Source: Euprymna scolopes (Eukaryota). From it: a stretch of 64,000 nucleotides of DNA. A model generated the notes under the pieces. The model was not told the origin of the DNA. It made no database searches and was given only the letters and a program-made list of their open reading frames with translations. The position numbers and the translations under genes are program-made. This document shows positions 1,682 through 62,136 of the stretch, piece by piece; within the stretch, counting starts at the first letter, position 1, and each line of letters opens with the position of its first letter. The stretch lies in assembly GCA_053919585.1 (NCBI GenBank), contig CM132801.1; one strand, 5' to 3'.

Positions 1682-1803
1682 GATCAATGGATCCATACCA
1701 AAGAGCTCCTCGTTCACCCCGAGGTAAGCGCCCACAGCCACTGGATGGTAGTACTACTGGACCTATCTTCACAGATGAATGCAAATCTCCTACCAGTGAT
1801 CAA
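1682..1803 (+). CDS. STXBP5: Tomosyn exon A (phase 1 in, phase 0 out): (G)SMDPYQRAPRSPRGKRPQPLDGSTTGPIFTDECKSPTSDQ
   Basis: A polypyrimidine tract ending tccctctgtag precedes 1682, with a CAA|gtaatt donor at 1803/1804. The peptide resembles vertebrate tomosyn GSNDPYRREPRSPRK...DRCKSPTS (recalled from family knowledge). Confidence 0.88.
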
Positions 1804-2324
1804 GTAATTTTTTTAATTTTTTTTTTTTTCTAAATTCCAACTTCGTCTTTTATTTGGAAATTTTAATTCTGATTCATTCTTGCTGCTTTTTTTTTTTTTT
1901 TTTTGGCTTAACTTAATTAAAAATTCTCAAATTTACGATCAAAGTTTGCTCTTACCTCCTTTTCAAATTTAAAAGTATTGTTGTTTGATTAGGGAATTTA
2001 AGTATAGTTTTTAATTTAATGCTTTCATGTATATATACAATGAAGTCCAGATTAACTTTTGAAATCTTTCTGAACGATTTACCTATTTTGTACTGTTTTT
2101 ATTTTTATTTTCTCCAAATTTTAATCATTTTTGTGTAAAAATAGATTTTAAAAAAAACATAATTGTAATAATTTAGAATATTTGTTTTTTTTTTTTTGTT
2201 ATTTATAAAATATATTTCTATGCTTTGTTTAAAATTATTTTGAAGTAGATATTAAGACAGCAAATTATTTATAGAGTTCTGTATATTTATGTATGCTTAC
2301 CCATTCTGGTTCTCCTTACTTCAG

Positions 2325-2336
2325 AATGGATTCAAA
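2325..2336 (+). CDS. STXBP5: Candidate 12-nt in-frame microexon (NGFK), phase 0-0
   Basis: Context is tgcttacccattctggttctccttacttcag|AATGGATTCAAA|gtgagg. The phase matches the exon A donor. Confidence 0.4.
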
Positions 2337-2519
2337 GTGAGGGGAAAAAGAAATAAAGTTAATCTATAATATATGATGGAAAACTTTTACTGTCCATATT
2401 TTACTAATGGCTTTTTGGCAAGAGTAGAAAGTGGACCTTGTTTACTTTCAGCATCCTCATAACTCTTGCTATCCTTATTTTTTTTTGTTAGTCCTCACAT
2501 TTCATGAGTGGTGTTTCTG

Positions 2520-3490
2520 ACAAAGTGGGAAGAATTGCTGTTGATCGAGTTCACAACAACAGCAACCTTCATATGCTTTGCAAGAACTCTTACCTAAATC
2601 TTTAATGTTTTGTTTACCAGAATTATGAGTTTATAATCATCTATATCTTTCCCACTATGCTGGTTGTTTTCCTTTAGCAGTGTGATCACTCCCTTGGTAA
2701 TCTGTCCAAAGAAGGATCCCTGAGAAAACCAATGGTAGAATAAATCCTTCAAAATAGGTACAAAAATGGGTGACAACTTTAAGTATAATTAATAGGACAA
2801 ACCATCAAGTCATGGAAGCATTATAAACAACCTGCTTCAGCACAGTAATGATCTTGTCCTCTGTAACCATGCCATCACGGCTATCTGCAGAGTGAATCAG
2901 CTAAATAGCTGTCAAACTCTTGGCTGCGAGTCTGAGTAGTTAGGCGAAGCACTTCTTCAAATGCTCACAGAATTTGTCATTAATTTTATTAGTTGATACA
3001 AGAGCATGTCCTTCCAGGTTCTTGATTTTCTGAATGTATCTGTCCGAACTACAACATATAGCAGCCTTATGCTAAACAGCGTCAGTGTTCATGGCTTCTT
3101 TTGAAACTTTGTTCAACCTAACTTTAACTACTTGACCTTCATATGCCTTGCTAGCCAAGCAATTCAGCATCCCCACCTCCAATGAGTGATATATCTTCTG
3201 AATCCCTCTTCTAATCAACACTTGTGTCTGCCTATCTTCTAAACACTTTTCTGCTATAATTTTATTTAGAGCAAGACACTAGCTGTATTTGACAGAAAAG
3301 CATCTTAGCCTTAGCAGCACTAAACTGTTGCTTGCTTCGATTACCACTCGAGACTATGAATTAATATAACTTTTTCTCCGGAAGTTGAATACTTCAACTT
3401 CCCATATCTGGCTAATCTACCCAAAAGGCCAAGGAAGTACTCTGTTTTCATCTTGGCCCATTCAAAGCAAGGAGCACCCCTACTCCTTAT
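2520..3490 (-). mobile_element. Decayed L1/Tx1-like LINE ORF2 fragment
   Basis: Minus-strand ITKGVITLLKE...GKDIDDYKLIILVNKTLKI resembles the RT motif GxITLxxK...YRPITLLNxDYKI. Many stops. Confidence 0.65.
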
Positions 3491-4435
3491 CTTTTTTTAG
3501 TTTATGAATTTCTATTATGACTCCATTCTTTTTCTAAAAAATATATTTCATAGCATATTAAGTGTGTCTTATGCTGATAACATGCACTCATGAATAGCCT
3601 GTGGACAATTAATGACCTCTTTAAGCATTTGACTACGAATTAGTATAATAGAAGGGTAAAAAATGTTTGTTTAAATATTTTCAAACAACAAACCTTAATT
3701 CTAAAGTTTAATATTATTGGGATCCTTTCAATAATCTTTTGCATAAGAAACAGCTAATAATTAAGTTGCAATTTCCATCATCCACAGGATTGAAAATTCC
3801 TTACATTCATTGTTGTGTATTAAAGACTCCAGTCTGATTCATCACAGATCTCATCAGAAGACGACTTTGCATGTTAAGCAACACACTCAACAACATGACT
3901 GCACGTATAGTTCTTAGGCTTGTAACAGTTTGATGAAAAACATGTAGAGTTAGTATATCTGAAACCATAGGATGAACAACTTTCCACTGAGACAGACCTA
4001 CATGCCCATATACCTAAAGTTACTGCTCTTTCAGATTTCTTCAAAAATCATTCTTGGAGCTTTTACTTAGGTTAAATTTTGATAGCAAATTGAACTTCCT
4101 CTCTAAAAACTAAAATAAATTTGTGGCAGGCTTGAAGGTCAAATTAATTTATATCTTAAAAAAAAAAAAAAAAAATTAATGCTATACATTGAGACTGGCA
4201 TGTATGATGTAATTGTAAAACAATAAACCATTAAAAAAATCCATATTTGAATGATTGAACGTTTTCTGAATTGGTCATTTTTAATCACGGTTTCATATGG
4301 CTTCATAAAAATACAATAAATGAAGAAAATGCAATTATTATTCGTGTCTGTATTTCCAGTATTAAAAAACAAATCCTTTTCAAATAAAATGATTTTTACG
4401 ATTTCTGCATACATAAATTATACAAGTTCTCTTTT

Positions 4436-4995
4436 AATTTTTATTTATTGTGGACGATTATCCTCATCTTTTATTAGTTGTTTCATAACGTTTCGGCCAA
4501 CTATTCCTCTGGCCTTCGTCAGGTGGTAACCGCAACGGATAGGAACTCTGAATCTCCTGACTGCATTCACTGCCTTCCATAGTTGTTGTCGTTTCACCAC
4601 GTCTTTGGCCAAGTAAGCTTCTTGCTGGCTTTGGGTAGGATTGACACCGCTATCTTCAGACAATTATCACCTGGAACCGTAGAGATTTAATGTCTCTATC
4701 AACTGCGCCACGGGCTCCGAAGGTGAGAATTGTCTGAAGATAGCGGTTTCAATCCTACCCAAAGTCGGCAAGAGGCTTACTTGGCCAAAAACGTGGTGAG
4801 ACAACAACTACTGAAGACAGTAATTGCAGTGAATGCAGTCAGGAGACTCAGAGTTCCTATCCGTCGCGGTTACCACCTGACAAAGGCCAGAGAAATAGTT
4901 GGCCAAAACATGAAACAACTAAAAGATGAGGATAATTGTCCGTAATAAAAATAAATAAATAATACTCATCTCAATGAATTCCAATTAAATGATAT
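4436..4995. mobile_element. Penelope-like insertion with ~220-bp inverted arms and hammerhead-like motif
   Basis: Arms ~4440-4668 and ~4725-4955 are reverse complements (hence the twin ORFs 4445- and 4730+). The 12-bp direct repeat AAGTTCTCTTTT flanks it at 4424-4435 and 4996-5007. Confidence 0.75.
4484..4526 (-). ncRNA. Minimal hammerhead ribozyme-like motif
   Basis: The minus strand reads cac-CTGACGA-A-GGCCA-gaggaatagt-TGGCC-GAAAC-GTT-atg. Both catalytic boxes and stem II are intact, and stem I has one mismatch. Confidence 0.55.
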
Positions 4996-7129
4996 AAGTT
5001 CTCTTTTGTTACTTCAAAATTTATCAGTTATTTTTTTTTATCCAAATTTCTTATCGTTTTGGTTCAAATCAAATGTCCATTCTTCAATGAGATTTTTCTT
5101 ATTTAGTCTTTTTTTCTAACCTTAAAATATTTTGATTTATGTTCCATTTTATTTCAGATTTTGTAGATCTAAAAGTTTTGAGAAAAAATTTATTGCTCAT
5201 TTTTTTCTTTATTCTCAATGCTTTGCTTTTTTTTTTTTTACAATTTGGGTTGGGATATTTTATTTAATTATATACTTTCTTGTGTGTTGGCTTACAATAA
5301 TGCATTGTGCCTGTTAATGTATCTATTTGTAGACGAGAGATTTTGTTAAATGAGATATAAGTTTTAATTTTTTACTAAAAACAAACTTTTTATTATTTTA
5401 TTCTTTTTAATAGCTATTCTATTAGACGGTGTAGAATTAATTGCATATGAGGAACATTTTGGTGTCATGATCTTATTAACTGATCAATGATACAATTAAA
5501 TTTTTACACAATTCAATTCATAAAAGTTGTTGGGATGAAAAAGAAAAGACAATCCAATCATGAATTGAATCCAGACAAATGGTATAAAAAAAACTAAACC
5601 GTGAAAACTGAAAATTTAATAAAATATGTATTATTAAACAAACTGCCTCCATAGATTAAATATGGGTTCAAGATGAAATTTTCTAGAGTATTGGTATTGC
5701 GCTATTTAGACAGACACTCTCAATTTACAATGGTTAAAAGCTGGCCAGAAAGACAAAAAGAAAAAACAGTAATATGACTGTAAATAAATGAAATTCAGAG
5801 GAGACTTTTTTTTTTTAATTTAGGAGAGTTCAATCTAGTTGAGCCTGGAACATTTTAAAATTAAATTTAAAGATCAGTAGTTCTCTCAAACTAAGTTAAC
5901 TCTATATGTAAACAGTTGAATCTAGATTTCCAGATCGAATCTTGATGCTTGTATGAGTTGATGGCATTTCTAGATCAAATCTAGAGGTCAGTCTAGTTTA
6001 GTCTCGTCACTTTGTTGTGATATTTGTCTTGTGATGATGACTGAATTTATCTCTGATTTATCAGTGTTATTGTCAAAGAAAATGATTGCCAGTGCATCTG
6101 ATATTAATAACTTTCTTTTTAATCTTAATATTTCTGTAATCAAACTAACTCTCTATTAGAGATACATATTTGAGGGTTATATTTAAATGGTAATGACTAC
6201 CAGAATTGTTCACCGAAGATATGCAATAGGACATTTTTGACACTGAGACGTAGGTTTAATCTCCACTCACCAGTTACCCAGTTTTAATCCTCTAATGGTC
6301 AATAAATGGACATCAATTAAACAGGAAAATTTTGTTAAAGCATGGAAAACAAATGCACCTTACCCTGCCATTAAAAAGGGACCTTTCAGGTTAGTCTTAA
6401 TTGTGGTCAACTAAGTGAAGAATTTGAATGCAAAACATGATTAGTCTAGTATTTTCAAATTGAGAAATTACATTATAAAAATACAAATATTTCAAATATA
6501 GAATTCAACTATAAAAGTTTTTAATTAAAAGTAATTAAAAATTAGGCTGAAATCAGGTCATGTGAAAAATGATTTTGATGTTTGGTAGATGAATAAAATT
6601 CAAAACTTTTGCATTAAAACTCTTTAATTTGTTATAAGAATTGTTTTGTTTTTTTTTATATAGTGAAATCATTATAGATAAATCCCTTTTCATTACTTTC
6701 AAGAAAAACTAAAATAACCTGAACTTTTATTTGATTACAAAGATAATGTTATAAAAATCTTTTTTTGTCTACAATTTTTCTTGCAAATTACAATATGGTC
6801 AAATAAAAACTGGATTTGGATCTTGTCCTTTTCCTTTTTGCTATATATATTTTTTTGTAAATAATAGAATATTTCTTTCTCTTACTTTGTCTAGGAATTT
6901 ACTATAGACATTTTCAATTTAGAAAAATTCCTATTTTCAGTATAATCTGTTTGGTTGCTATAAAAATGTTAGTTTTTGCATTCAAATTTGCCACTCAATG
7001 TTAGAAGGTTCATTTTATGTAACATGTGAAAGTCAAAGGAAATGTGCTGTCCATTACTCTTCACTTTGAAGTCTTCATTTGTAAATCATAAAAAGAAAAT
7101 GTAAGCAAATGTTTTTATATAAGTAAAAC

Positions 7130-28162: not shown

Positions 28163-29824
28163 CACAGGTGACAAAAAGAAAGTCTGCACTTGTCATTTTT
28201 TCAAAAACTGCAAATTTAAGCTAAATTTAATGTAACTGTTTAAACAAAATATACCTCATTTGATTCACCTTTTATTCTTCGATAATTTGACCTGTTCATA
28301 TTTGACTTTTAATTGAAATATTCTAGAGTTCATGTCAATTTAAAAAAATGATACCAAATTGAGGAGGCAAAAAGAAAGTCCGCACAATGGAAAATTGTTA
28401 TTTAAATGTAACCTTAGGACATTAATGCAACACAAATACAACAAGAACACGATAAACTAATTAATATTTAGTAGCATAGCTCTTCTGCAATTTGACAGCC
28501 TGCAATTTTGGGAGAATTCCTTGAATTATACTGCAGCAATACTCCGGGAAAAGGGCATCCCACTTTTCCTTAATTTTTGTCAAAAGTACTTCCAAATTCG
28601 AAATTTTAACATTGTGTAGCTGTTGTTTTATGTAATGTTATATGTTTTCGAAAGGATTGAGGTTTGGAGATTGTGCAGGCCAATCCAAACACGGAATATC
28701 ATGCTCTTCCAGGAACCTCTTGACATTGCCAGCTGTGTGAATGAGAGCATTATGCTGCATGAAGATGGGATTATCCAAATTCCAATCAAAGTAGAGTAGA
28801 AAATGCACAGTCAACATATTAATATACTTGATCAAATTAATTCGACCTTGCAAGCAAACTATAGGCCATGGACCATTGGTACTAATAATGCCTCACACCA
28901 AAACTGAACCTCCACCTCTTACAGCGTTGAAACTGAACACCTGGGATTAAATTCTTCGTCTTTCCTCCGACGGACGTACTGCCTACCATCATTGCCTAGC
29001 CTATTGAACTTGCTTTCATCACTAAAAAGCACTTTTGACCAATATGAAGAGTCATTATCTCCATTGCATCTGACGATGTCCAGACGGCGCTTTCTGTTCT
29101 TTACAGAAATCATTGGCTTGTGTCTTGCAACATATCATCGCAAATTAAATTCCTTTAATTTGTTCTGGACAGTAGAAAGAGAGCACTTTTGAACATGATT
29201 GCACTGTTGTTGGATTTTGGGAGCTGTTTCAAATCTGTTTCTTAGGCTGCAGATCTTGATAGCATTGTGTTCCCTGTTAGAAGTAACTCTAGTACCCCCA
29301 GATTTAGGGGCATCACGAACACTGCCGGTGTTTTGGTACTTTTGTACAGTCTTTCGTACCATTTTCCTATCACATTTCAATCTGCGGCCGATTTCTCGAT
29401 TGGATAAACCAGAAAGGTGGAGATTAATGAGCTCCTTACGATCACTAAGAGAAAGTTGTGGCATATGGACTAAATGTTACGTTGTATAACCTGGAACAAC
29501 AACAACAATTATGATTAGAGATGCTTAGTTGCCTGTTGGTGGATATTTTAAACTAATTTAGGGACGATAATTAAGCTGGTTTTAAGCGAATTTATTGCTG
29601 CGAACTTTCTTTTTGCCTCCTCAATTTGAAGTTATTTTTTTAAATTGACGTGAACGCTAAAATATTTCAATTAAAAGTCAAATATGAACAGGTAAAATTA
29701 TAGAGGAATAAAAGGCGAATCAAATGAGATATAATAGATTGTTTACACATTTACATAAAATTTAGCTTAAATTTGCAGTTTTTGAAAAAATTACAAGTGC
29801 AGACTTTTTTTTTTGCCGGCACTG
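28163..29824 (-). mobile_element. Near full-length Tc1-family transposon with long IR/DR-type TIRs
   Basis: The ~230-bp TIRs each carry an outer and an inner aaaagaaagtc(t/c)gcac-like repeat, and the element is flanked by TA. Confidence 0.9.
28461..29464 (-). pseudogene. Tc1 transposase pseudogene
   Basis: Contains an N-terminal HTH (MPQLSLSDRKELINLH..SNREIGRRL), WSKVLFSDESKFN, MQHNALIH (second catalytic Asp changed to His), WPAQSPNLNPFENI and a terminal YATKY*. Broken by stops and frameshifts. Confidence 0.9.
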
Positions 29825-34822: not shown

Positions 34823-35437
34823 CCCGAGTTACCAATATACCGAGTTACCAATATACCAGTAATTTCCAAAAATGCTATATACCAAGTTTACCTCTAAACT
34901 AGTATTTTTCCGACCATGCGTTTTTGTCAGGGAGCTAAAAATAGCTACCCAGTTGCTGCTTAGCCTCGATTTAGCGCAAGCCTAATGTTTTGCAAATGGT
35001 TTCCTTTGTTTCTGCAGAGTTTTGAGTTGTTTTGTAGACTAAAGTAGCCATGAAGCAAGCTAGTGATGAACGAAGCACTTCGACAAGTAAAAGAGCAAGA
35101 TCTAGAAGTTTCACGGTGCAACAAATGTTGGATAAAATGACAAATTCTGATTCAGACAAAGGCGAATTTAATCAGGAGTATATTTCTGAATCAAGTAATG
35201 CTAGTGATGATGTATATATCGATGAAGGAGAAAGTGATGATAATTCTGATGATGCAAGTGGGCCTAGATCAAAATCGAGTGTTAAAAGTAGGAGGCGTGT
35301 AACTCAACCAGGAGATTCTGGTGTGGTTGATGAGGGATGGGGGTCGCAATTTTGTAGCTCTAGATCTGGATTTCACAATTTTGCCCAAGAAGCATGCACA
35401 GGGGCAAATTAGGTTCAGTAGCTCAGGTCTGGTAGGG
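34823..35437 (+). mobile_element. Internally deleted piggyBac-like element
   Basis: Boundaries are TTAA|CCC (34819-34825) and GGG|TTAA (35435-35441). A subterminal 17-bp tandem duplication is present, and ORF 35050-35412 encodes an acidic Ser/Asp-rich N-terminus. Confidence 0.65.
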
Positions 35438-35742: not shown

Positions 35743-35960
35743 TTATTTATTTATTTGCGGACTGTTATCCTCATCTTTATATTTGTTGTTGTTTCACTAC
35801 ATTTCGACCAACTATTCTTCTGGCCTTCTTCAAGTGTTAAAGTCAGAGGAATACTTAGCCGAAACTTATGAAGCAACAGCTATGAAGATGAGGATAATAG
35901 TTTGCATATGAATATACAAATTACTCATCTCAAAGGATTCCAATAAAAAATGATATATAA
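35743..35960. mobile_element. Penelope-like inverted-arm insertion, same family as 4436-4995
   Basis: It has the same terminus ctcatctcaa..gattccaat..tgatata and the flanking repeat taa(a/g)cagaaggt at 35731-35742 and 35961-35972. Minus-strand 35795-35836 reads cac-TTGAAGA-A-GGCCA..TGGTC-GAAAT-GTA-gtg. Confidence 0.7.
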
Positions 35961-36557
35961 TAAGCAGAAGGTATTTGATTATTTTCTGAATCATTTTCAA
36001 AACATTTTAAAGATTTCATTGAATTTCTACAATGTTGCTGTTAGATTCTACTTCAGTTCTAACACTATGAATTTTAGCTGAAAAAATTCGTTTATCAAAA
36101 ATGAATAGCGAGCTATTATTAGCTATTTTAACATTTTATGGTCATTGAAAGAGTTGACTTTAATATCACTTAAAGTATGGATTGATTTGCCACAAAAACA
36201 ATGCAATTAAATCTGTATGCCATTTTAACGACAAACAAAACAAAAAAAAATCAATTATTTGGAAAAATATTTTATTCTAAGAAAAAACGAACTTACTTTA
36301 TTAAAAAAATCTTTGAATTTTATTCTGAATTCCAATTAAAAAAAATCTCTTGGCTGAAATCTTTATAACGAACAAGAAAAGCAAATCCATTCTTTTCCTA
36401 AAGTATGCATTTTTTTTTTTTTTTAAATCAATTCTTTCCCTCCAATATTGTACAAGCTGCTGTTTTTTGTTTTTTTTTTTGTTTTTTTTTTTTGTTTTTT
36501 TTTTTTTTGTTCCTTAATTTGCATTTTAGTTTGTACCACTGCTCCCTTATTTTCCAG

Positions 36558-37344
36558 CCCCTCCTCCCCCCGGCAAGTCGTCGTCGTCGTCAGCCAATGG
36601 CTAGTGGCTCTTCTCCGTGTGGCGAGGAGGAGGGGGAGCAGGTGCACCACCTCCCCAGCACACACACGCCTGACGTGACCACTGAACCAACTTGCATTAC
36701 CACCAGTTTCTCCTTGTCAAGTGACTCCATTTCAAAACAAACTGACGATGTAAAAACCGCCGACGAATCCTGGACAATTGTCGAGGTTGAACACGAGCAA
36801 ACATCTAGTTTACAGCCTGTTGAGACGCTCAACACACAAACAATTTTCCCGCCAGTAAAGACAATGCCTCATCGAACAAAATCAAACAAGTTACCAAAGC
36901 CGAGTGCAGCAGTTTCTCCAATAAAACGCTCTCCATCTGAATCTAACATTAGAAAACGAAATTCACCCAGAGAAGACGACTCTGTATTTTGCAATAGCTC
37001 ATCTAGTCGAAACCTACACGAAACCCACAGTCCCATGTCACGGGAGGCATATTCTGATGTAAACTTAACTGAACCATATCCTAACTTGGACGCCAGTAGT
37101 CCTTGTGCAGATTCCAAAGACTCAGAACCGTCAATATTCAGAAAAATGAGCTCCAGTCTCAAAGCTATAACCCACAAGGTGAAAGGCAATTGGCTAGAAG
37201 TAGCACATGACCCTCATAAATATAGGCCCCCTCGACGGTTTGGCGATGTCGGGAAGGTTGATGTAATTGATCTAACGAAGGAAAATGAATCATCCTACAA
37301 AAGGCATATGAGCAGAAGTGAAATATTCAAGGGACTTTTTGTAG
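36558..37344 (+). CDS. STXBP5: Tomosyn large alternative exon B (787 nt, phase 0 in, phase 1 out), Ser/Pro-rich disordered loop
   Basis: Splice sites are cccttattttccag|CCC CTC and GTA G|gtatgt. It has 262 open codons in a GC/CpG-rich island with no TE motifs, and its phases bridge exon A and exon D. Confidence 0.75.
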
Positions 37345-37716
37345 GTATGTTGTAAAATATAGTTAAACTTAAAGGTTACAAAATTTTTGTGCTTGCTAAA
37401 ATGTACTCACCGCTTTAACTTTCCTCCTTTTTTCAGGGTGAGAGCGCCACCTATTGCTTGCCATAGCAAGAATTGCGATAAGTCTAACCACTCTTCTAAT
37501 CCTAGTCTATTTGTACTCATAGCACTAACGGCCTTAGACTGCATGCAGGCATCTATTCCCCACCCCCGTCCACCCCCACCCCCACTGGCAGGTGAACGTT
37601 TGCTTCCATAGCAGCTGTTGGTAGTCGATGCATGTACCTGCTTTTCCACTGACCATCTTTATCAATATCTTTTTGTAGTGATTCAGTTTTGAGCTGACTG
37701 TGATTTTTGCCCTCAG

Positions 37717-37797
37717 ATAAGCCACACATAGACAGCTATATTACTATGAAACAGCAGATTCAACACCAACAACAGCACACTTCATATTTTCTCAGAG
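37717..37797 (+). CDS. STXBP5: Candidate 81-nt cassette exon, phase 1-1: (D)KPHIDSYITMKQQIQHQQQHTSYFLR
   Basis: A ctgac branch point precedes the tttttgccctcag acceptor. Only phase 1 is open. The donor GAG|gttgtt is weak. Confidence 0.3.
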
Positions 37798-38574
37798 GTT
37801 GTTCTTCTAGAGCTTTAATAGTGTTACTAAAAAATGAATTCATTTTGATTTTTATAATTACAAAAGTAACAAAACAAAAACTTCTTTGAGTTAATGAATT
37901 AAAAAAAAAAATCTTTAGTAAAAGGAGGGTTCCATTTTAATTAAATCTTTGTGAAAATCTTCATTCAAATAATCTTTATTTGGTCAGTAAACTCAAGAGG
38001 TCATTGAAATTGAACATAGCATAAACATTGTAAGAATTTCCTGAATAGAATGGGCTGTTTCTTCTGTTTGCACAAAGGTTGAGAATAGAAAATTTAATAA
38101 ATTTCTCTTATTTAATATTGGGAGTATATACTTTCTTTCACGCGGGTATTTTCTTTCAAGTAAATTATTTTCTTTTTCTTTTTTGTTTTTTAGTCCATCA
38201 AAAGATGTTCAATTCGCTAAAATAATTCTGGCTGCATTAGTAAATGACAAAATGTGCAAGGGAAATAACTCTTGACGACTTTTTGTCACAAAGACAAAGT
38301 TAGTTTTAATTAGTATTTTGAATTTTAAAATGGGAGAACTAATTCGAAATCTGTTTCCAGGTTAGAAGAATGCAAGTTGAAACAACAAACAGATATTTCA
38401 TTTAATTAAGATTTAATATTTGTAAAATGATTTGCCATAAGATTTTAATTTCAAACTGACAAATACTAAAAAAAAAATTTTTCTTTTTTAAATCTCTCTT
38501 GCATAATTTTTATCTTGCATTTTCTAATTAGAGTTTAATCAAAATTATTTTATTTTGTCTCTGCATAATTAGAC

Positions 38575-38880
38575 ATTAACACGGCTATTCTTGTTTCACC
38601 AAAGTTAAGTGAGGTTGAGTCTGATTAGGACTAGATGGGTAACCATTTGGGAATAAAACTATAATTGTTAACATTAGATTGCAGGATGACAACTGCAAAG
38701 TAGAGATCATCCTCTAATAATATCATTCTCAATGTAAGAAATACGAGGCTGTCGTGTTCAATTTGAAATAATGACAGAATAGAAACTAAATTATGATAAA
38801 CACAAATTAACCTAGTAAGGTGTGGCCTATGTAAATAGAAGGCTATTCCACTAAAGACACGTAACTTGCTGACATTGCAG
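38575..38880 (+). mobile_element. Decayed 5S rRNA-derived SINE-like copy
   Basis: caccaaagttaagtgaggttgagtctgattaggactagatgggtaaccatttgggaata aligns by eye to the 3' half of 5S rRNA. Confidence 0.55.
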
Positions 38881-40135
38881 AATAAAGTACAATGGCTATG
38901 GTAGGCAGTTGAAAGTCAATAGTAGATAATTATGTTAATTTTTTTTTTTCTTTGTAAATCAATTCACTATCATATCATAATGGTATTATAAACTCTTAAT
39001 CCCACAGATTTCAATGAATTGATTTGTATAGATTTAACAAGAAATTGACTGCTCAACAAATAAACTTAAGTCTTTGAAATTTGCAGTTTAAATAATACTT
39101 GATTTGAAATATCACAAAGTGATATTTCCAGCTTTCATATTATTTAAGCTGCAAATTAATATTAAAAAGCAACGAACCATTAGTGGTGTACACTGATGGT
39201 TAATGCATACTTTGGTTAATTTTGATGTTAATATTTTAATTCATGATATGACATAATCATGTAGAACATGACAAGAACTTTCTTATAAACCATTGCATTT
39301 AAATTTCTTGGAAAGAATAATTAGTTAATTTGGGGGGAGGTACTTGTCTGGTTTGATATTTTTATCTTCATCTAAATTGGTCTCTTATGTATGAATAAAA
39401 GTTTGGAAGTATGAAACCATTCATGTGCAATAATTCCTGCTTATTCATTGACATTGCAATTAACATTAGAGATAATTAACCGTTTTTAGATCAATATTCT
39501 GGTCACTATACTTATACACTTGTGTAGTGCTTATTTTATATCATAATTAATGCAATTTACTGCCATTAATTAAATATTAAATACACCAAAGCTTTAAAGT
39601 ATTCATCCATTTTAAATTAGTGTTAATGTAATCCTCTTTTGTAAAGTCTTATTTGCTTCACACAACTTGAAAGATAATTTGTGTAAAAGACAAAAAATAT
39701 ATGTATTATTTAGCAAATGACCATTTTCAGCTTGGTTGTGCATTTTTTCAAGCTTGGCCATTTTTATGTTGAATTTTGAAAAAATTCAATTTTGACAGAA
39801 TTCCCCAAATTTGAAACTAAACACCTGAAAAAAGTCGAAAGTTACCTTTGCTGAAATACTAAGAATCTAACAACCTAGACGAGAAATAGTCGGAATAATC
39901 CAAATAATCCAAATTCTTGTCTCAAACATCCTGAAATGCAAAATAAATAAACTATCAAGTGGTGATAGTTGTTCTATGTTTGGCTTATCAAAAAATGGTG
40001 ATGGTACTGCTGATGCTGCTGCTGGTGGTGATGATGATGATGATGGGTTTCAATGTTTAGAATTGACTAATCCAGGGTTTTGAACATGACGGCTTTCATT
40101 AATGCCTTGCTTGATTTTTTTTTACTTGATTCTAG

Positions 40136-40280
40136 ATAGATGCCGCTTCTCCCAGTCCCAGCCCAAAACAAAAGAAACAGCACCCGCACCCAGAGCTGAA
40201 GCGGACAAAGTCGCAGGCGGCTACCCGCAAAATTCAGAAGGCTCAAAGCAACGCATCATTGGAGGATAATAATGGAGGAG
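40136..40280 (+). CDS. STXBP5: Tomosyn alternative exon C (145 nt phase 0->1, or 141 nt from 40140 phase 1->1): IDAASPSPSPKQKKQHPHPELKRTKSQAATRKIQKAQSNASLEDNNGG
   Basis: Tandem acceptors tttacttgattctag|atag|AT and donor GAG|gtgcta bound a GC-rich open frame. LKRTKSQ..RKIQKAQS recalls invertebrate tomosyn loop sequence. Confidence 0.72.
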
Positions 40281-40928
40281 GTGCTACTGCTACTACTACT
40301 CCTAACACCTTAATAATATTATGACTATTACTATTGTTATTACTTTTATTCTAGTACCACTGCTAATGGCTGCTGTTTTAATATTTCTTTATGAACCTAC
40401 CATTTCTTTTTCAGTAGGGAAACCTTTTCTTCTTTTTTTTTTGGGGGGGGGAGGTGGGGGATAATCTCATAGTTTGTTTTGTTTTGTTTTGTTTTTTTAA
40501 TTTGAGCCAGAGTTATTCATAAAGAATGTACGAAAGTTGTTTTCTGGAACTGATTGGTAAAATTGAGAATTGCTAACATGTAGGAATTATTATCTTCTAG
40601 ATATCAGTATTTAGTTTGACATTTTTTTTTGTTCAATGATAGAATAGTGACACATTCAAAAAATACTGTTTGTCTTTTGTTTAGGAACACAATATAATTG
40701 ACTTAATGTTTTTTAATTCTAGTCAGAAATGCTTTTCTAGTAGACAGTTAAATGAGAGAAGAATCACTTTATAATTTAACACAACCTAAAATGAATAACT
40801 GTGATAAACATTTATACCTCTAATTTACATTTAAAAAAAATGGTAATTAATTTAAGATCATGTAAAATTCAAAAGTGATTCTGATGCCTTTAAAATGTTG
40901 ACTAATTTTTTGTTGGTTTGAAAGTTTT

Positions 40929-40961
<33 letters not shown>

Positions 40962-43622
40962 AAAAAAAAGTAATTTTTAATCAAGTAACTATTGTATCAT
41001 TGAACATATTTTATTTATTTGTTAAATTTAAATTTCTAGTTGGTCCTTAAATGTACATACCCTACAACATGCATGTTTCAGTTGACCCCCCTCATTATTT
41101 TACAATTTAATACCAAGTTATTATAAAGACGTTTTGTTTGTTGTTTTTCCCAAATTTGAGCAGTTTTAAATGTCTTGGCATTTTATCTGAAAGTAAGCAT
41201 GATATGTTTGTCTTTTAAAAGATGTCATTTTTTTTTGTATTGAACCCAGTTAATAAACGCAATACAGATTATCAATTCATTATCTCCAAGAAAAAAAAAT
41301 GCTTTTTTTATCAATTTAAATACTAGCAGCTACATGAGCAAGAACTGAAATTTCAGATAAAGTGGACTCGTTAATATGTGGAATTAGTAACTAAACATGA
41401 AAGCTGGCTATTAATTTCATGGACTAAGGGGACAACCGATATTTCAGTCATGTAGTCAACCTTAATCTGTAGTAGCTCCATTACATGATTGAAATATTGG
41501 TTGGTTTTAGAGATGTCTATGTAGCTTTTTAACTAGTCAGTTCTCGTGTTTATCAACTAATTCCATATATATATATATATATTTCGTTGAAAACGATGAA
41601 TATTATATTTTAGTATTTTACTTACTAACATTGAGGTATGAATCCACAATTTTACTGTTATGGGCAAAATAGCAACTTGTGTTCATTGAAACATACCATA
41701 ACTTGTATGCAATAGGTGGATTATCTTTCATCATTAAATAACACAAAAGGAATTAATATGCTGTAAGTGAACTTGTATGATCTTTGGAACTTTTACATGC
41801 TCACCGCAATGATAAAATCATAAAAGGATGCTGCTGATTTTTTTTTAATTTTCACTTTATCGTACCTAAGTGTTTTGATATCCTATGACCAAAAGCTTCA
41901 CAATTGCTAATTTTCTTGCTCTCAATCAAATGACCATGATGCTAGAGATGTTCAGTCTTTTTTCAAACAAGCGAATCGTCTGCTTTATATATGGCTAAAA
42001 CTTATAATCCTTCAGTTCACAGTTTGAATCAGCTGCATTGCATCTTGATTTTTTTTCGGCTTTTATGTACAGCACATTCTTTGTCATTTACTTTGGAGAT
42101 GGGGAGGAGGGGGGAGATTGGCTTTGTCCATTACATTATATTTATATGCATAGACAATATTAATGTTTGCAATAATTTTGTCCTTGTTAGGAAGTAAAAC
42201 ATAAAATAGATATAGTTATAAGATTTCCTGTTGAGAACATATTAACTTTATTGATGATGGCTATAATGTTAACATGAATGTGTTTGAAAAGAGTTTTTAT
42301 TTTTTGCCAAAAATCTTGGATTTTGTCAGCATTCAAAATGCTGGCAAAATGACACTCAAAATAAACTTTGTCGTTTTCAACAAAATGTATATAAAAGAAA
42401 ACTTCATGTCCAAACATGCCTTGAAATATGAATATAGATTTAGAACTAGATTTTTTGAATTCTTATTTTGCCAATCAGGATCCAAAGAACAAATCATATC
42501 AATTCTATACAAGTTGTTTTTTTTTTTTGTTTTTTTTTTTTCTTACCAGTGGTTCGTGTCAGGTTATAGCAACACTCTTTATGACATATCAACAACAGCA
42601 AATTCATCAATTATTCAAGGAAGTGATTTTTAAAAGAAGTGGAATTTTTTACTCAAATATAATTTTTTTTTTTTTTTTTTCAATTTTCAGTTTTTGTTTT
42701 GTTGATGTCTTTAAATCTTGTTCAGATTTCCATTTTCGTTCAGCATCAGTTTGTAAAACAAGATAAATAGCTTCACCATCCACTGAATCATGCATCAAAA
42801 TTGTTTCAGCTACAAATGTGTTAGACACCTTACATTTAATCTTGTCCTTTACTGTCGATCAATAAGAAACATGATAGAAGACTGTATCCTCAGTACAATC
42901 CATCATGATAACTTCTATTCCATCCTTTATGTTGGCATAATTACATTTTCATGACAAGTTAGAATGTCCACTTCAATGTTTCTGGAATGTTGCAGTTGAG
43001 ACTTATGATAAAATCACAGTGTCCTGAAGCTCATCAAAAGTGCAGATGCAGACATTTGTGTGCCAATCTTGGGAAGTATGAGAGTTTTAACAGATGCACT
43101 ATCTCGTCAGCCAACAACTGATTGAAGCCATTTTTTATGCTTCAGTTATTCAGTGGTGTTATTCTTCAAGGCATTTCAAACAGATTGCCTCCCTTTATGT
43201 ATTTTGGCACACGATTTATGAAATAGACGCAGTAAAAACAATAAAAGTCATGCATAATGTAACATCCGAGCCAAGATTAAAATCTATCTGTTCTGATGCT
43301 ATACTTCAATTTTTTGTTCTCAGTTAGTGGAGGAGAAATCCTTCACGACTGAGACCATTTTTAATTTTTGCTCCTTTCTCCATATTAGAAAAAAACGACC
43401 TTGGTGTCTAACTCTGCCCTCGTGGGGAGGCAAAGGAAATAGGAACTAGTGATATGAAAACGCTTTTCAACTACAACCAATCTTATCAAGAGAAATAACT
43501 CATTTTTAATTTAAGAGTATAAAAGGACTAATCTCCCTTTTAATTAATTTTTTTTTCTGTATGTTTAAAAACAGTATACAAACAAGTAGAAATTAAAGAA
43601 GTAACCAAACAATGTCTTGTAA

Positions 43623-52119: not shown

Positions 52120-52128
52120 GACACTCAA
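52120..52128 (+). CDS. STXBP5: Candidate 9-nt neural-type microexon (GACACTCAA)
   Basis: A long poly-T tract leads to ctgctttctgtag|GACACTCAA|gtaagt. The donor is perfect, UGC lies near the 3' splice site, and the exon preserves frame. Confidence 0.55.
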
Positions 52129-56420: not shown

Positions 56421-58719
56421 CTTTTATTTCTTTATTATACTTTATAATTTTTTCTAAAATTCTAACAAACTTCCATAAGTTAAAGTATATGGTAATAAAA
56501 TATTTCCAAGTCATGAGGTTTGGGACTTTATTTATTAACTTTTGACTAGGTTTATGTAATCTTTCTTGAATGAATAAAAAAAAAAAAAAGAAGAAAGAAA
56601 ACGTATACATATAGTTAGATCAAATGTGGAAGGCATTCAGGAAAATAAATATTTTTGATTTACACTCTTACTTGAGAAACTTTGTTAGAATTTTTAATTT
56701 TTGATCTGGGTAGCAAGTGAAGTAAGTCTTTTAGATCTGCATCTACTTAGTATCCTTGCTTTTTTTTTTTTTTTTTTTTTTAAAGAATCTGTGATTATTG
56801 ATTTGATTAGAGTACACTGATGATTGTGTGTGCTACATATACTAATATAGTCCCAGTTCTAATACAAATATGATTTTATCTTTATTTTATTGGAATGGCT
56901 GCTATCGACCCCCTTCCCTCCTACAGAAGTTTTCTCTGGATCCACTTTGGTTAAGCCTTTAATCGTCTGTTATTAATTTAAAGCCTCATTGTATTTTGCT
57001 TTTCATATTTTCTAAAAGATTTGAATTGTTTAATAAAATCATTATCTCAAATTGAATTTTAAAATTACTCATAAAATTAGTTATATCTTTACATCTCTTG
57101 TTTCAAAATCTGTTTATTGGTATTAATCACTCAATAATAGTGGACATTATTTTTCGTAGTAATTTTTTTATGGTTCATTTTAAAGTAAAAATAGTTGTGT
57201 AGTTTTGTGTTCACAATCAGCTCATTCCAGCTGTTTTTAGTGTGCATATCACATTACCAATAACTTTAATTAATTTTTTCATTTTATTATACAAGTTCAG
57301 TTTTTGCTTTTACAATAATTATTTCTCTTATTTTATGATCTTGCAAAAATTGTTCAAGTTAATTGTATTCCTAATTATTGAAGATTTTATTTTGATCTCT
57401 TCGGAAAAGTTGAAGCTAACTTAATTTCTTCATATCAAAAGTTTTAAATAATGTTCCTGTTTTGAATAAAATCCTGACTCTATGGCCTCCTGCTGGTAAT
57501 GGTTCCATATTCATCTCTTTTTTTTTGCACTTGAAAGCGTTTTGTTGCTTCCTATTTGGTTCGACAAGACCTCCAATCTACGTGCCCCTTCAACAAATCT
57601 GTTTTAAAACAGGAAAACTCTATCAGCTGTATTTCTCCATTTCTTTTTAAGTTTATTATTTTAAAGTGTTTTTTTGTTCAACTTCTAATGCAGCATAACC
57701 AGCACTTGGCACCTTCTTCTTGACTATTCCCATCTTTCTCTTTGATTCTTATTTACTATACATTTTTTTCTCATCTGAATTAGTAAGAAACGTTTTATGA
57801 TTTCTAAAAACTATTCCACTAACGTCTAACCAACAAGAATGAATATTGTTTGGCAATCTTAAAATCATTTTGTTAATGTTGTGGATATTGCCTTAGTTAC
57901 AATTTTGACTACTAGGGACAGATTTATATATGCTGTTTGCAGCCATATTTAGAAAAGGTTAGTTATTTTATAGATATGGAACAATTTACTTGATAAAAAA
58001 TGGCTGAAGGAGGATTAAGTATTGTTAATAGCAGCCCAAATGGTCAACTAATGGCAATAACCACAACATTAACACCGCCTTTATTTCTTTTATTAAAATG
58101 AATGTTTGTTTTTATTGTGTTATCTGTTTTTGCCTACACTTGACAGTCAGAAAAGAAAAATGTAACAATTTAAAATGATTTTTTTTGTGTATGTAATTTG
58201 TCTATGTAATTTGATTTGTGTAATGTTTATATTATTTTGTGAATTATCATCATTTGATATCTGCTTGTTACCAATTTCTATATTGACCCATCATTGTGAT
58301 GATATTTGGTTGAACAATGCCAGTACCTGCATAAAAACAGATGCTCAATTCTTCATTTATGTCCCCTCCCACTGAAAGGCAGGTGAGTGCCAATTCACTC
58401 ATAAAAGTACATACTGAAAGAATATGGTAAGCTTGGCATCAAACGAACAGAATTTTCTATTGTCATTTTTTTCTGTCTTTTTTTTTTTGTTTGTTTTGTT
58501 CTGTTATGTATTGTCAGAAGAGTGTAACAGTTAGAATATAAAACTGATTTCTACCATGTTCATCAAAATTTTTTTAAATTGTTACTTTGTATATGTAATA
58601 AATAGATTTAAGTGTCAGGAAAAAAAGATATTTCTATTATTTAGGATAGAATTAGAGTTCAGAATAAACAGCAAAACAATTTATATATTTTTAGTTTTAG
58701 TTATGTATGGTATAGTACT

Positions 58720-59340
58720 GTGTGTATGCATGTAAGTGTGATGTATGTATGTGTAACTACATCTATGGTGATGTATGTATGTGTAACTACATCTATGGTG
58801 ATGTATGTATGTGTAACTACATCTATGGTGATGTATGTATGTGTAACTACATCTATGGTGATGTATGTATGTATGTGTAACTACATCTATGGTGATGTAT
58901 GTATGTATGTGTAACTACATCTATGGTGATGTATGTATGTATGTATAACTACATCTATGGTGATGTATGTATGTATAACTACATCTATGGTGATGTATGT
59001 ATGTATGTATANNNNNNNNNNNNNNNNNNNNNNNNNNNNNNNNNNNNNNNNNNNNNNNNNNNNNNNNNNNNNNNNNNNNNNNNNNNNNNNNNNNNNNNNN
59101 NNNNNNNNNNNNNNNNNNNNNNNNNNNNNNNNNNNNNNNNNNNNNNNNATGTATGTATGTATGTATAACTACATCTATGGTGATGTATGTATGTATAACT
59201 ACATCTATGGTGATGTATGTATGTATGTATAACTACATCTATGGTGATGTATGTATGTATAACTACATCTATGGTGATGTATGTATGTATAACTACATCT
59301 ATGTTGATGTATGTATGTATGTGTAACTGCATCTATGATG
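58720..59340. repeat. Compound minisatellite aactacatctatggtg(atgt)n, spanning an assembly gap
   Basis: Read directly; units vary by ATGT copy number. Confidence 0.95.
59012..59148. other. Assembly gap (N run)
   Basis: Run of N. Confidence 1.
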
Positions 59341-62016
59341 ACTCAAATAAACTTTTTCTTTATTGGCACTTTAAAAAAAAGTACCAAAAGATTAACAGAT
59401 TAAACATGAAGAGTTGTACGCCACTTGCAGCTGACCAATTCCTACCCTTTGCTTTGAGATACGATCCTGTGGAACAATGATTTGTGGATACTTGTTATCT
59501 TAGCCCATCATTCTATCTCAAGATATACACTTTTCGTTGTTTAAATACTTAAATCAAGAAAAATGTGCTACACAACAACAACGAGCTGAAGCAAGTTTGG
59601 GTCTTGCATTGAGTAATTGAGAATTAAAAGAATGTAATAAACGCCCAACAGTTATTATCTGGTGGTGAGGTGTAATTTTTTTTCTGCTCAGTTATCATAT
59701 CTATCAGGGTCCAAACGTTCGGTTAAATAAATCTGTGCTTAGTATGACACGCATCTGCATCCAATAGTGTACATATGTATTTGAATCTATTAACAGATAT
59801 TATTATATACTGTGTATAGTCATAAGAGAGCAAAGAAAAGTGATCTTGATTAAAAGGATTGAATGTATTAAAAATGTATACAATAACAGAGAATGTGTTC
59901 TTTGAATTAGAAGGTTTTGGGGGAGGCGGTGTGCAAATAAGCTTGCCTGCCTATAGGAGAACAAGGCCAAGTTACTTGTTGGTTGAGTAAAGTAGGTCTA
60001 TGGGCTGACATTGTTGATGACATTTTATGTCTTGCAGCTGAGTTTCTGTTTGAGGCTGGAAGGAAAGTGGATTTGGTTTGAAACCCTTTTTTATTAGAGA
60101 AAATCAGATCATCTCAACAATTTTTTGTGACATTCCGTTTTTCATGACAGGATGTCTTATCATTGGTTCTTAAATCAAATTATCTCTATTTATTTCAGAA
60201 CTGTAAGAGATGCACGGATCCCCTTCACAAAGAAACATTTTCTTATTTTTATTTGTCCTCTCTATCTATATTCAGTAAATTTATGTGTAGCCTTAATTTG
60301 AACGAAATCTAATTTGAGCAGACTATAACATTAATGACTTGAAGTCATCAAGGATTTCTACCAGAACAATTGAACTCGATTTAAATATCCATCCAGTGCA
60401 GCCGTAGCCAAGATTAAACTCACTACACGAGTTTGTAGTGTAATTCAAATCTTGTCGGTGGCTGAATACTTGCTGCTTTGCCAGGGCTATCAAGGGTATT
60501 TTTTATCGTGATGCCATCACTAGACGGTGTGTCTACCATGGCTTAAGAGAGTCCCATCTACCCCTGAGAAAAAAATACTGCACCAGTTTCTCAACCTGAT
60601 ATTGTACCTCGCGGTACATACAGCGCCTTGCCTAAATAACACTAGAGTGTTGAAATACTATAAAAAAAAAAAAACAACCTTTACACTTCTGCAGTTTAGT
60701 ACCTTAAACAGTCTCAGAAAGACAAGAGCCATTATTAGTTTGTGACTAATGCAGTTGTTTTCTTAAAAAAATTGTTCAATTTTTGTGATAATTATAGCTT
60801 TGACATTTTTTCCTTCAGACATTATGCTCCATGGTACATGGTCATCACTTTTTATTCATTTGGTATTCTGTTTGTAAACACGTATCATCCACGTCCTCAC
60901 AAAATTGCATACACATTGATATTATAGTCAGATTCACTTAGAGTTTTAATGAATGTTACAAAATCATGTTGTTTCTTTGTTATTCGTCTTCTTTTTATTT
61001 GTTTACATGTAATTCTAGTATTGCCGTTATATGTCGGTACACCATAAGATTTAAACGAACATATTCTTTTTGTTATATGAAAAATTAAAATAGTTATTTC
61101 CATAGTAGGTGCTCAACTGATCTCCAATTTCTGATAACTACTTTCCCAACCCCCATTCCCAAACTTTTGCAGCAAGAATTTGTTTTCTTACCATCAATTT
61201 AAAAACTTTTTCTTCCTGTATGTACCTAAAACCAAACGGAAATTCTATTAACATAGTTTCTTTCCAAAGAGTTCCCATATGTGTAACACATTACCTTAGA
61301 ACAACTTCTTTACAGACTTCAACATGATCATTTTCAAGTCTTATGTTAAAGACTTATCAAGGTATTCTCTTAAGTAGTTAGTTTGTTAGTTCTAACCAAT
61401 TTTTTTTCTGTTTTTTTATGGTGTTGTTCATTGTACATCTCAATAACCCTTACCCTTAAGTGGCTTTTAACCTTGATAAGTGATGGATAATTAGTATAAA
61501 AATAATTGTTACAAATGTAAAAAAAAATTTTTTTCTGAATAGTTATTTTATTTGACGACTTTTCAAAGTTCGTTCAACTCATATGGTGTATCTACAAATA
61601 AAAACAATTAAAAAAAATATTATTTTCATTAAAAATTTTATTTTATGTCAATTCAAAAGTTCATTGTTTTGTACATTTCATTTCTCTGTGCAGTCAGTGT
61701 CTTAAACTGTTTGTGGGTTCGGTTTCACCTAAAATGCTTTTTTTATGATGCAGAATTTTTTTGAAAATGTCCACCTCTTATGTTTATAATATTTTGAATT
61801 TATAAAAAAATTGTCAACTTTTTCTTTTTCTTTTTTCTTTTTTATTTGATAAAAGAAAATCTTGTTTTACTCAATTTCTTTGTTTTTTTATTTTGTTTCC
61901 TTTTTGTTTTATTTAATCAGCTTGTTCTCATCATGTGAAACAAAAATTTAGAAACAATTTACAAAATGTGATATTGGTAAGAGTTCGTCTGATTCTGAGA
62001 TTTGTTATTCTTACAG

Positions 62017-62136
62017 ATAAAAATGATGGCACGTCATTTTCACGATCAAGAAGTTCAAGCATGTCCAGTCTTGAGAATGTCTCCAAGGAAGCGATCCAGT
62101 GCTTGAAATTTGCAGATTCTTACACAAGAAAAACAG
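62017..62136 (+). CDS. STXBP5: Tomosyn exon D (120 nt, phase 1-1): (D)KNDGTSFSRSRSSSMSSLENVSKEAIQCLKFADSYTRKT
   Basis: Splice sites are tttgttattcttacag|AT and ACA G|gtttct. The peptide matches the tomosyn signature SFSRSRSSSVTSIDKESREAISALHFCETFTRKT. Confidence 0.93.

What the first reader, a model, noticed from the sequence alone, without database searches (positions are those of the whole stretch)
1682..62136. A 60-kb phase-switch splicing module for the tomosyn hypervariable loop
Seen in sequence: exon A ends in phase 0 and exon D starts in phase 1, so direct joining frameshifts and a 3n+1 adapter is needed. Four solutions are visible: exon B (787 nt), exon C (145 nt), an internal donor in exon A, and a possible 4-nt microexon. 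Established: tomosyn isoforms differ in this loop (vertebrate s/m/b forms, Drosophila exon 13A/13B). Inference: loop length here could range from near zero to more than 300 aa, with frame logic and NMD policing the combinations.
Basis: partly seen in the sequence, partly recalled or inferred. Interest (0 to 1): 0.82.

Follow-up and report, generated by a model that had tools for sequence, protein, structure and literature searches.

The report
Alternative loop exons in cephalopod-type tomosyn
This 60-kb stretch of a mollusc tomosyn gene holds two real alternative exons (787 and 145 bases), each of which restores the reading frame between its neighbours; this is an ordinary frame-enforced "one or the other" splicing arrangement, already known for the same loop of tomosyn in flies and mammals.

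Summary
Exon A (1682-1803) ends in phase 0 and exon D (62017-62136) starts in phase 1. A direct A-D join runs into a stop inside D.

**What RNA contigs show**
- A-B-D is proven. A 1978-nt contig lies exactly on exon B (36558-37344), and its overhangs are the last 30 bases of A and the first 30 bases of D.
- Exon C (40136-40280, 145 nt) is spliced at exactly these borders in two runs.
- No B-to-C joint and no use of the 141-nt acceptor was seen.
- Contig lengths suggest that a 9-nt microexon (52120-52128) is sometimes placed before D.
- The internal donor in A could not be tested.
- The "4-nt microexon" is at chance level.

**Gene identity.** The gene is tomosyn. LLGL-domain exons lie upstream and a tomosyn-type R-SNARE last exon lies downstream, all on the same strand.

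**The two exons.** Exon B is single-copy, seen only in close relatives, predicted disordered, and under purifying selection. Exon C is near-identical in runs of about nine organism labels.

**The gap.** It sits in an intronic minisatellite and touches no exon.

**Verdict.** This is a real module, but an ordinary frame-enforced mutually exclusive exon pair, with a likely optional microexon. It parallels Drosophila tomosyn exon 13A/13B. It is a new member of a known kind and of modest interest.

The parts
1682..1803 (+). Exon A (122 nt). It starts with 2 bases that complete a codon and ends in phase 0. It encodes ..SMDPYQRAPRSPRGKRPQPLDGSTTGPIFTDECKSPTSDQ.
   Evidence: Sequence and translation. 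Its last 30 bases are the overhang of the X10 RNA contig in front of exon B (table 7).
1724..1729 (+). Internal donor-like site GTAAGC inside exon A. The 42-nt short form 1682-1723 would end in phase 1 and fit exon D or C141 directly.
   Evidence: It matches 7 of 9 donor consensus positions, and As+D is open. Its use was not tested; no reads were laid here.
36558..37344 (+). Exon B (787 nt, 262 codons + 1 base): a lineage-restricted alternative exon that is predicted disordered.
   Evidence: RNA contigs of X10, X13, X1 and X2 lie on exactly these borders, with the A and D overhangs read in X10. Only one frame is open. Relatives' copies are 69-90% identical with in-frame indels. It is single-copy. 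Mean pLDDT is 44.
40136..40280 (+). Exon C (145 nt, 48 codons + 1 base): an alternative exon that is near-identical in many organisms.
   Evidence: X1 and X2 contigs of 214 and 205 nt lie at 40136-40281/40280 with 30 foreign bases on each side. All sampled 31-mers are held in runs of about nine organism labels. Only one frame is open.
40133..40139 (+). Tandem acceptor TAG-A-TAG. The second AG would give a 141-nt exon C that keeps phase 1 after exon B or after short A.
   Evidence: Sequence and frame table. In X1 and X2 the contigs start at 40136 and run on without a break, so only the 145-nt form is seen.
52120..52128 (+). 9-nt microexon candidate GACACTCAA. It adds three codons and changes the junction codon (..G-H-S-N.. 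instead of ..D..).
   Evidence: Long T-run, TGC, CTGTAG acceptor and GTAAGT donor, 8 of 9 consensus positions. It is in frame in every open combination. Use is inferred: the X2 contig on B and the X1 contig on C each go on with one G plus 38 bases, which equals 9 + 30.
58738..59341 (.). Intronic minisatellite (30/64-nt unit) that holds the assembly gap 59012-59148.
   Evidence: Tandem Repeats Finder rows lie on both sides of the N run and have the same unit.
62017..62136 (+). Exon D (120 nt). It starts in phase 1 and encodes (D/N)KNDGTSFSRSRSSSMSSLENVSKEAIQCLKFADSYTRKT.
   Evidence: Sequence and translation. Only this frame is open. Its first 30 bases are the overhang behind exon B in the X10 contig.

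Best explanation
The window holds the middle of a tomosyn (syntaxin-binding protein 5) gene of a large-genome mollusc. Between constitutive exons A and D, the spliceosome includes one of two unrelated alternative exons. These are the 787-nt exon B (a 262-residue disordered insert with conserved short motifs, found only in close relatives) and the 145-nt exon C (48 residues, near-identical across many organisms). Both have length 3n+1, A ends in phase 0 and D begins in phase 1, so exactly one of them must be present for an open frame. Skipping both, or including both with the main splice sites, gives an early stop; such RNAs are presumably removed by nonsense-mediated decay (inferred). A 9-nt microexon is probably inserted optionally before D after either B or C. 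The result is a set of tomosyn isoforms that differ in the length and content of a surface loop, chosen per sample or tissue.
For: **Frames**
- Frames are forced: B, C and D are each open in one frame only.
- The A-D join gives a stop inside D.

**RNA, exon B**
- The X10 oligo-dT RNA contig (1978 nt) lies exactly on 36558-37344. Its overhangs are identical to the end of A and the start of D.
- The X13 polyA contig (1898 nt) has the same borders, and X13 has no contig on exon C.

**RNA, exon C**
- X1 and X2 hold B contigs as well as separate C contigs.
- The C contigs have exact borders at 40136 and 40280 with 30 foreign bases on each side.
- No 37344-to-40140 joint appears in any of the four runs.

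**Conservation**
- Exon B ORFs from relatives' unspliced DNA contigs are 90, 87 and 69% identical, with indels in whole codons and long invariant islands.
- Exon C 31-mers are all held in runs of about nine organism labels.

**Gene identity**
- LLGL Pfam hits lie 94 and 68 kb upstream on the same strand.
- The last exon lies 71 kb downstream, ends in KYKDKKWYQF, and its best solved relative is m-tomosyn 1URQ at E 3.9e-7.

**Known parallels**
- Drosophila tomosyn has mutually exclusive exons 13A (conserved) and 13B (poorly conserved) that encode a loop (PMC8612732).
- The mammalian hypervariable region is built from spliced exons (PMC3188574).
- 60% of human mutually exclusive exon clusters have non-triplet lengths (PMC5740500).
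Against: - All RNA evidence comes from assembled contigs. These drop rare variants and give no tissue, strand or level.
- The partner letters of exon C's two junctions were not among the overhangs printed. A-C and C-D are therefore inferred from the frame and from contig lengths.
- One X1 contig on B stops at 37340, 4 nt before the donor. This is unexplained.
- NMD was not tested.
- No single contig was shown to link the window's exons to the LLGL and R-SNARE exons.
Confidence: 0.75

Rival explanations
1. Besides A-B-D and A-C-D, the internal donor of A, the 4-nt-shifted acceptor of C (and perhaps a 4-nt-shifted donor of B) and a 4-nt microexon are all used. The loop would then range from almost nothing (short A joined to D) to about 340 residues (A+B+C141+m9+D), with frame logic coupling distant choices.
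For: - All these joins are open in frame.
- The internal donor GAG|GTAAGC matches the consensus as well as the terminal one, 7 of 9.
- The TAG-A-TAG acceptor is present.
- The X1 contig on B ends at 37340, just before a GT at 37341-37342, and B783+C145 would be in frame (own arithmetic).
Against: - No B-C joint appears in four runs.
- The C contigs start at 40136 and run through 40140-40170 without the break that a second acceptor form would cause.
- AG-NNNN-GT occurs 180 times by chance in the interval, and none has a good pyrimidine tract plus donor.
- The alternative donor TTT|GTAGGT matches only 5 of 9 positions.
- Use of the internal donor is untested.
Confidence: 0.17
2. Exon B is not part of tomosyn mRNA. 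It would be an independent intronic gene or retained intron sequence that merely has a long open frame.
For: - The open frame extends 51 codons upstream of 36558 to an ATG.
- Gene callers on relatives' DNA contigs call it as a free-standing ORF.
Against: - RNA contigs stop exactly at the AG and GT borders and continue into exons A and D.
- Depth is zero in the flanking intron in X1, X2 and X13 (table 2).
- The called ORFs end in the conserved intron start (GML stop) and begin in the pyrimidine tract.
Confidence: 0.02
3. B and C are independent cassette exons whose apparent mutual exclusion is only a sampling effect of contig assemblies. Out-of-frame products are common and have no regulated role.
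For: Contigs drop rare variants, and only four runs were laid.
Against: - B and C are both under strong purifying selection in frame.
- X13 holds B at good depth with no C at all, while X1 and X2 hold both. This speaks for a regulated choice.
Confidence: 0.06

Closest known systems
Drosophila tomosyn exons 13A/13B (Sauvola et al. 2021, PMC8612732)
   Same: The gene family is the same. Mutually exclusive exons encode a loop that protrudes from the WD40 scaffold. One exon is highly conserved across species and the other is poorly conserved, as with exon C versus exon B here.
   Different: Here the two exons differ about five-fold in length (145 vs 787 nt) and are unrelated in sequence. A probable 9-nt microexon follows. 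Homology of the exons to 13A/13B, and identity of the loop, were not tested.
Mammalian tomosyn-1 s/m/b and tomosyn-2 s/m/b/xb isoforms (Groffen et al. 2005, as cited in PMC3188574)
   Same: Alternatively spliced exons build the hypervariable region between the WD40 scaffold and the R-SNARE. That region carries regulatory modification sites (PKA, SUMO).
   Different: The mammalian isoforms differ by short cassette exons. A 262-residue insert such as exon B has no relative outside close kin. Exon phases of the mammalian genes were not examined here.
Frame-enforced mutually exclusive exons (Hatje et al. 2017, PMC5740500)
   Same: Exon lengths are not divisible by three, so inclusion of both or of neither shifts the frame and gives a premature stop.
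   Different: Typical mutually exclusive exons are homologous duplicates of similar length that encode the same structural element. B and C are non-homologous and encode disordered loop sequence.
Neural microexons (3-27 nt) with a UGC-containing pyrimidine tract
   Same: m9 is 9 nt long. It has a long T-run, a TGC 10-12 nt before the AG and a GTAAGT donor, and it lies in a synaptic gene.
   Different: Neural specificity and dependence on an SRRM4-type factor were not tested.

Membership tests
Tomosyn / STXBP5 gene | C-terminal R-SNARE motif of the tomosyn type | tested here: met
   The exon at G000:C19:114524942-114525076 is on the + strand, 71 kb downstream of the window. It reads ..HERGEKLEGLDDRTQQMTAQAESYSQLAHQLMLKYKDKKWYQF followed by a stop. 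Its best PDB relative is m-tomosyn 1URQ_A at E 3.9e-7; VAMPs reach only E >= 0.2.
Tomosyn / STXBP5 gene | N-terminal Lgl-type WD40 scaffold | tested here: met
   Pfam LLGL (PF08366) hits lie at C19:114295930-114296115 (E 1.8e-12) and 114322119-114322346, both on the + strand upstream of the window. The only other LLGL locus is on C29. Lgl_C gave no hit anywhere; its exons are too short.
Tomosyn / STXBP5 gene | The window's exons A, B, C and D belong to the same transcript as those domains and lie in the hypervariable loop | tested here: inconclusive
   Same strand and order, and the 1978-nt contig extends 806 nt upstream and 385 nt downstream of B, but its letters were not available. The likeness of exon D (SRSRSSS.., FADSYTRKT) to the region after the mammalian hypervariable region rests on my memory. 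Pfam, PDB and Atlas searches with the 39-residue piece found nothing.
Frame-enforced mutually exclusive exons | Each alternative exon is joined to the same upstream and downstream exons | tested here: inconclusive
   Met for B: A and D letters were read at both junctions in X10. For C the borders are exact and 30 foreign bases flank each side, but those letters were not printed.
Frame-enforced mutually exclusive exons | No transcripts join the two alternative exons | tested here: met
   No 37344-to-40136/40140 joint appears in X1, X2, X13 or X10 (table 5). The caveat is that contigs drop rare variants.
Frame-enforced mutually exclusive exons | Lengths are not divisible by three, so both or neither gives a premature stop | tested here: met
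   787 and 145 nt are both 3n+1. A+D gives 1 stop and A+B+C145+D gives 5 stops.
Frame-enforced mutually exclusive exons | Out-of-frame products are degraded by nonsense-mediated decay | not testable with these tools
   Needs NMD inhibition and junction counts.
Tandem (4-nt shifted) splice-site frame compensation | Both acceptors 40136 and 40140 are used in RNA | tested here: not met
   Only 40136 is seen in X1 and X2, and the contigs run on without a break at 40140 plus 30. Rare use is not excluded.
Microexon (9 nt) | Included in mature RNA between flanking exons | tested here: inconclusive
   The X2 contig on B extends to 37345 (G) plus 38 bases. The X1 contig on C extends to 40281 (G) plus 38 bases. 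This fits 9 nt starting with G plus the 30-base k-mer overlap into D. The letters themselves were not seen.

The most novel reading that the evidence does not exclude
The three 4-nt or 80-nt shifted splice sites would be used in rarer tissues or cell types. They are the internal donor of exon A, a GT 4 nt inside the end of exon B, and the TAG-A-TAG acceptor of exon C. Frame would then couple splice choices made up to 60 kb apart, allowing a loop-less isoform and a B+C double-insert isoform. That would be a combinatorial, frame-gated code for the tomosyn loop in a cephalopod-type nervous system. Separately, the near-identity of exon C at the nucleotide level across many organisms would reflect a second, non-coding constraint.
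Probability: 0.15. Interest if true: 0.5.

Novelty: new member of a known kind. Interest (0 to 1): 0.3.

Why it matters
Tomosyn is a brake on synaptic vesicle priming, and its variable loop is where mammals and flies place regulatory sites and isoform differences.

This mollusc lineage uses the same position for a frame-enforced choice between two exons. One is a deeply conserved 48-residue exon. The other is a 262-residue disordered exon carrying strictly conserved short motifs. This gives:
- correct exon borders for gene annotation;
- a natural pair of isoforms to test for different release properties;
- a set of candidate linear motifs in exon B.

It does not reveal a new mechanism.

Tried and rejected
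**Searches that found nothing useful**
- Protein searches for spliced transcripts containing B. phmmer against 1.84 billion representatives and two word-indexed searches found only three ORFs called on unspliced DNA contigs of relatives, and no junction peptides.
- Exon C peptide search: no candidate in the allowed length range.
- DNA of the relatives' contigs could not be fetched because the sample files are too large. No synonymous/non-synonymous rate comparison was possible.
- Pfam on the four exon peptides gave only sub-threshold noise (KIAA1549, TonB_N).
- PDB and Atlas searches with exon D found nothing.
- Pfam Lgl_C in the genome gave no significant hit, and none on this chromosome.

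**Readings rejected**
- Local RNA structure as the reason for exon C's conservation. The fold of 40100-40320 is weaker than shuffles, z = +1.64.
- The 4-nt microexon, which is at chance level.
- Other 3n+1 candidate exons in the interval. Only short, low-GC chance candidates appear besides B.
- Exon B as a repeat or transposon exonisation. It is single-copy in 5.9 Gb.

**Limits reached**
- The joint 38956-40284 in X1/X2 has non-splice ends and short sides, and lies in CTA-rich repeat sequence. I take it as another locus's repeat.
Full report
**1. What is in the sequence**

The window is G000:C19:114390001-114454000, + strand, of a 5.9-Gb genome. RNA runs that hold its exons are labelled mollusc or invertebrate. 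From the genome size I infer a decapodiform cephalopod; this was not tested.

| Exon | Coordinates | Length | Splice sites and frame |
|---|---|---|---|
| A | 1682-1803 | 122 nt | CTCTGTAG before, GTAATT after; internal GAG|GTAAGC after 1723 |
| B | 36558-37344 | 787 nt | TTTTCCAG before, GTATGT after |
| C | 40136-40280 | 145 nt | Second AG 4 nt in gives a 141-nt form; donor GTGCTA is weak, 5 of 9 |
| D | 62017-62136 | 120 nt | Open only if one base is carried in from the exon before |

- B, C and D are each open in only one frame, and the RNA-proven A-B joint fixes A's frame (of its two open frames). "A ends in phase 0, D starts in phase 1" is therefore a fact of the sequence.
- A joined directly to D gives a stop inside D.
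- A+B+D and A+C145+D are open. A+B+C145+D is closed. A+B+C141+D, short-A+D and short-A+C141+D are open.
- At the window's stop-codon frequency (0.064), 262 open codons have P about 3e-8.

**2. The gap**

The N run at 59012-59148 lies inside a minisatellite (30/64-nt unit) that runs from 58738 to 59341, with the same unit on both sides. It is in the intron, 2.9 kb before exon D, and no exon or frame crosses it. An RNA contig joins B directly to D. Exon order across the gap is therefore sound, and only the intron length is uncertain.

**3. RNA evidence**

Exon B's 31-mers are all held in 20 runs from 8 studies. Six of these runs are on record as oligo-dT or polyA RNA-seq. Four runs were laid on 35800-41700.

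- **X10 (oligo-dT).** A 1978-nt contig lies on exactly 36558-37344. Its overhangs read ..GATGAATGCAAATCTCCTACCAGTGATCAA (the end of exon A) and ATAAAAATGATGGCACGTCATTTTCACGAT.. (the start of exon D). A-B-D is therefore a real mRNA.
- **X13 (polyA).** An 1898-nt contig has the same borders, and there is no contig on exon C.
- **X1 and X2, exon B.** Both have B contigs with 30 foreign bases upstream.
- **X1 and X2, exon C.** Separate 214- and 205-nt contigs lie on 40136-40281 and 40136-40280. Each has 30 foreign bases on both sides, which is the k-1 overlap expected where assembly paths branch. Exon C is thus spliced at the 145-nt acceptor and at the GTGCTA donor.
- **No B-to-C joint.** None was listed in any run.
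- **No 141-nt form.** The C contigs run through 40140-40170 without the break that a second acceptor form would cause.
- **Intron depth.** It is zero around B in X1, X2 and X13.

**4. The 9-nt microexon**

The X2 contig on B extends one base further (G at 37345) and then 38 more bases. The X1 contig on C does the same (G at 40281, then 38 more). In both cases 1 + 38 = 9 + 30.

This is what a 9-nt exon starting with G, followed by the 30-base overlap into D, would give. GACACTCAA at 52120-52128 has a long T-run, a CTGTAG acceptor and a GTAAGT donor, and it keeps the frame in every open combination.

This is an inference from lengths, since the letters were not printed. I put it at about 0.75. 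It implies that at least four isoforms exist: A-B-D, A-B-m9-D, A-C-D and A-C-m9-D.

**5. What could not be shown**

- The "4-nt microexon" has no support. AG-NNNN-GT occurs 180 times in the interval, and none has a pyrimidine-rich tract plus a good donor.
- One X1 contig on B ends at 37340, just before a GT at 37341-37342. A 783-nt B joined to C145 would be in frame, but that donor matches only 5 of 9 positions and no such joint was listed. I leave this unexplained.

**6. Gene identity**

- Pfam LLGL hits lie at C19:114295930-114296115 (E 1.8e-12) and 114322119-114322346, on the + strand upstream of the window.
- A weak synaptobrevin hit lies at C19:114524942-114525052 on the + strand.
- That hit proves to be a last exon ending ..LMLKYKDKKWYQF followed by a stop. 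Its best solved relative is m-tomosyn (1URQ_A, E 3.9e-7; VAMPs only E >= 0.2).
- An Lgl-type scaffold followed by a tomosyn R-SNARE on one strand identifies tomosyn.
- No printed contig links these exons directly to A-D. That link rests on strand, order and the long contigs around B.

**7. Nature of the two exons**

*Exon B*
- It is single-copy in the genome.
- It has one relative cluster among 1.84 billion representatives.
- Three ORFs called on unspliced DNA contigs of relatives are 90, 87 and 69% identical. Their indels are whole codons, and they share long invariant islands such as PVKT.PHRTKSNKLPKP, PIKRSPSESNIRKRNS, SREAYSDVNLT and PPRRFGD.GKVDVIDLTKENESS.KRHMSRSEIFKGLFV. The intron start is conserved too.
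- It is rich in S, P, E, T and K.
- AlphaFold gives mean pLDDT 44 with no residue above 70; the alignment is shallow.
- I read it as a disordered insert carrying short linear motifs under purifying selection.

*Exon C*
- It encodes 48 residues, and 77% of them are disorder-promoting.
- All sampled 31-mers are held in runs of about nine differently coded organisms.
- Runs of organisms B and C in the same studies hold next to none of exon B's words.
- C is therefore the deeply conserved exon, and B is the faster-evolving, lineage-restricted one.

**8. Comparison with what is known**

- Drosophila tomosyn has mutually exclusive exons 13A (conserved) and 13B (poorly conserved) that encode a loop protruding from the WD40 core (PMC8612732).
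- In mice, seven isoforms of the two tomosyn genes differ by spliced exons that encode the hypervariable region, which is a target of PKA and SUMO (PMC3188574).
- Enforcement of mutual exclusion by non-triplet exon lengths and a premature stop is common; it applies to 60% of human clusters (PMC5740500).
- The arrangement here is thus a further example at a known hot spot.
- It differs in two ways. The two exons are very unequal in length and non-homologous, and a probable microexon follows them.

**9. Verdict**

This is best described as a frame-enforced mutually exclusive exon pair plus an optional microexon in a mollusc tomosyn gene. It is a new member of a known kind and of modest interest.

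Noticed in passing
window 40136-40280: All sampled 31-mers of exon C are held in runs of about nine differently coded organisms. Exon B's words are found only in organism A and in metagenome-labelled runs. The local RNA fold of exon C is weaker than shuffles (z +1.64), so structure does not explain the nucleotide-level conservation.
   Followed up: partly
window 41386-41402 (with 41374-41410 / 41534-41570): One intronic X10 contig shows four clustered A>G differences (41386, 41397, 41401, 41402) on the sense strand. They lie inside one arm of a 37-nt, 78% complementary inverted repeat. This fits A-to-I editing of an intronic hairpin, but one contig at depth 6 cannot be told from an allele.
   Followed up: partly
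window 37540 and 37629 (196 and 285 nt after exon B): Two TGCATG (Rbfox-type) motifs lie within 300 nt downstream of exon B, against a window density of 0.34 per kb. None lies near A, C, m9 or D. This is a lead for regulated inclusion of exon B.
   Followed up: no
window 37254-37298: The KVDVIDLT stretch, which another first-reader note flags as a SUMO-interacting motif, is invariant in all four exon B sequences. It sits in the longest conserved island of the exon.
   Followed up: partly
window 37340: The X1 contig on exon B ends 4 nt before the donor, just before a GT at 37341-37342. An alternative donor here would give a 783-nt exon that is in frame with the 145-nt form of exon C. No such joint was listed.
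   Followed up: no
window 29135-29464 (-) and 35050-35412 (+): These are intronic ORFs that look like transposon remnants. One is a helix-turn-helix N-terminus of Tc1/mariner type. The other is an acidic, serine-rich ORF. Neither was searched.
   Followed up: no
window 35840-35960: A short repeat here attracts very many high-depth RNA contigs in all four runs (depth up to 12911), with many different overhangs. It is a dispersed repeat that is expressed from many loci.
   Followed up: no
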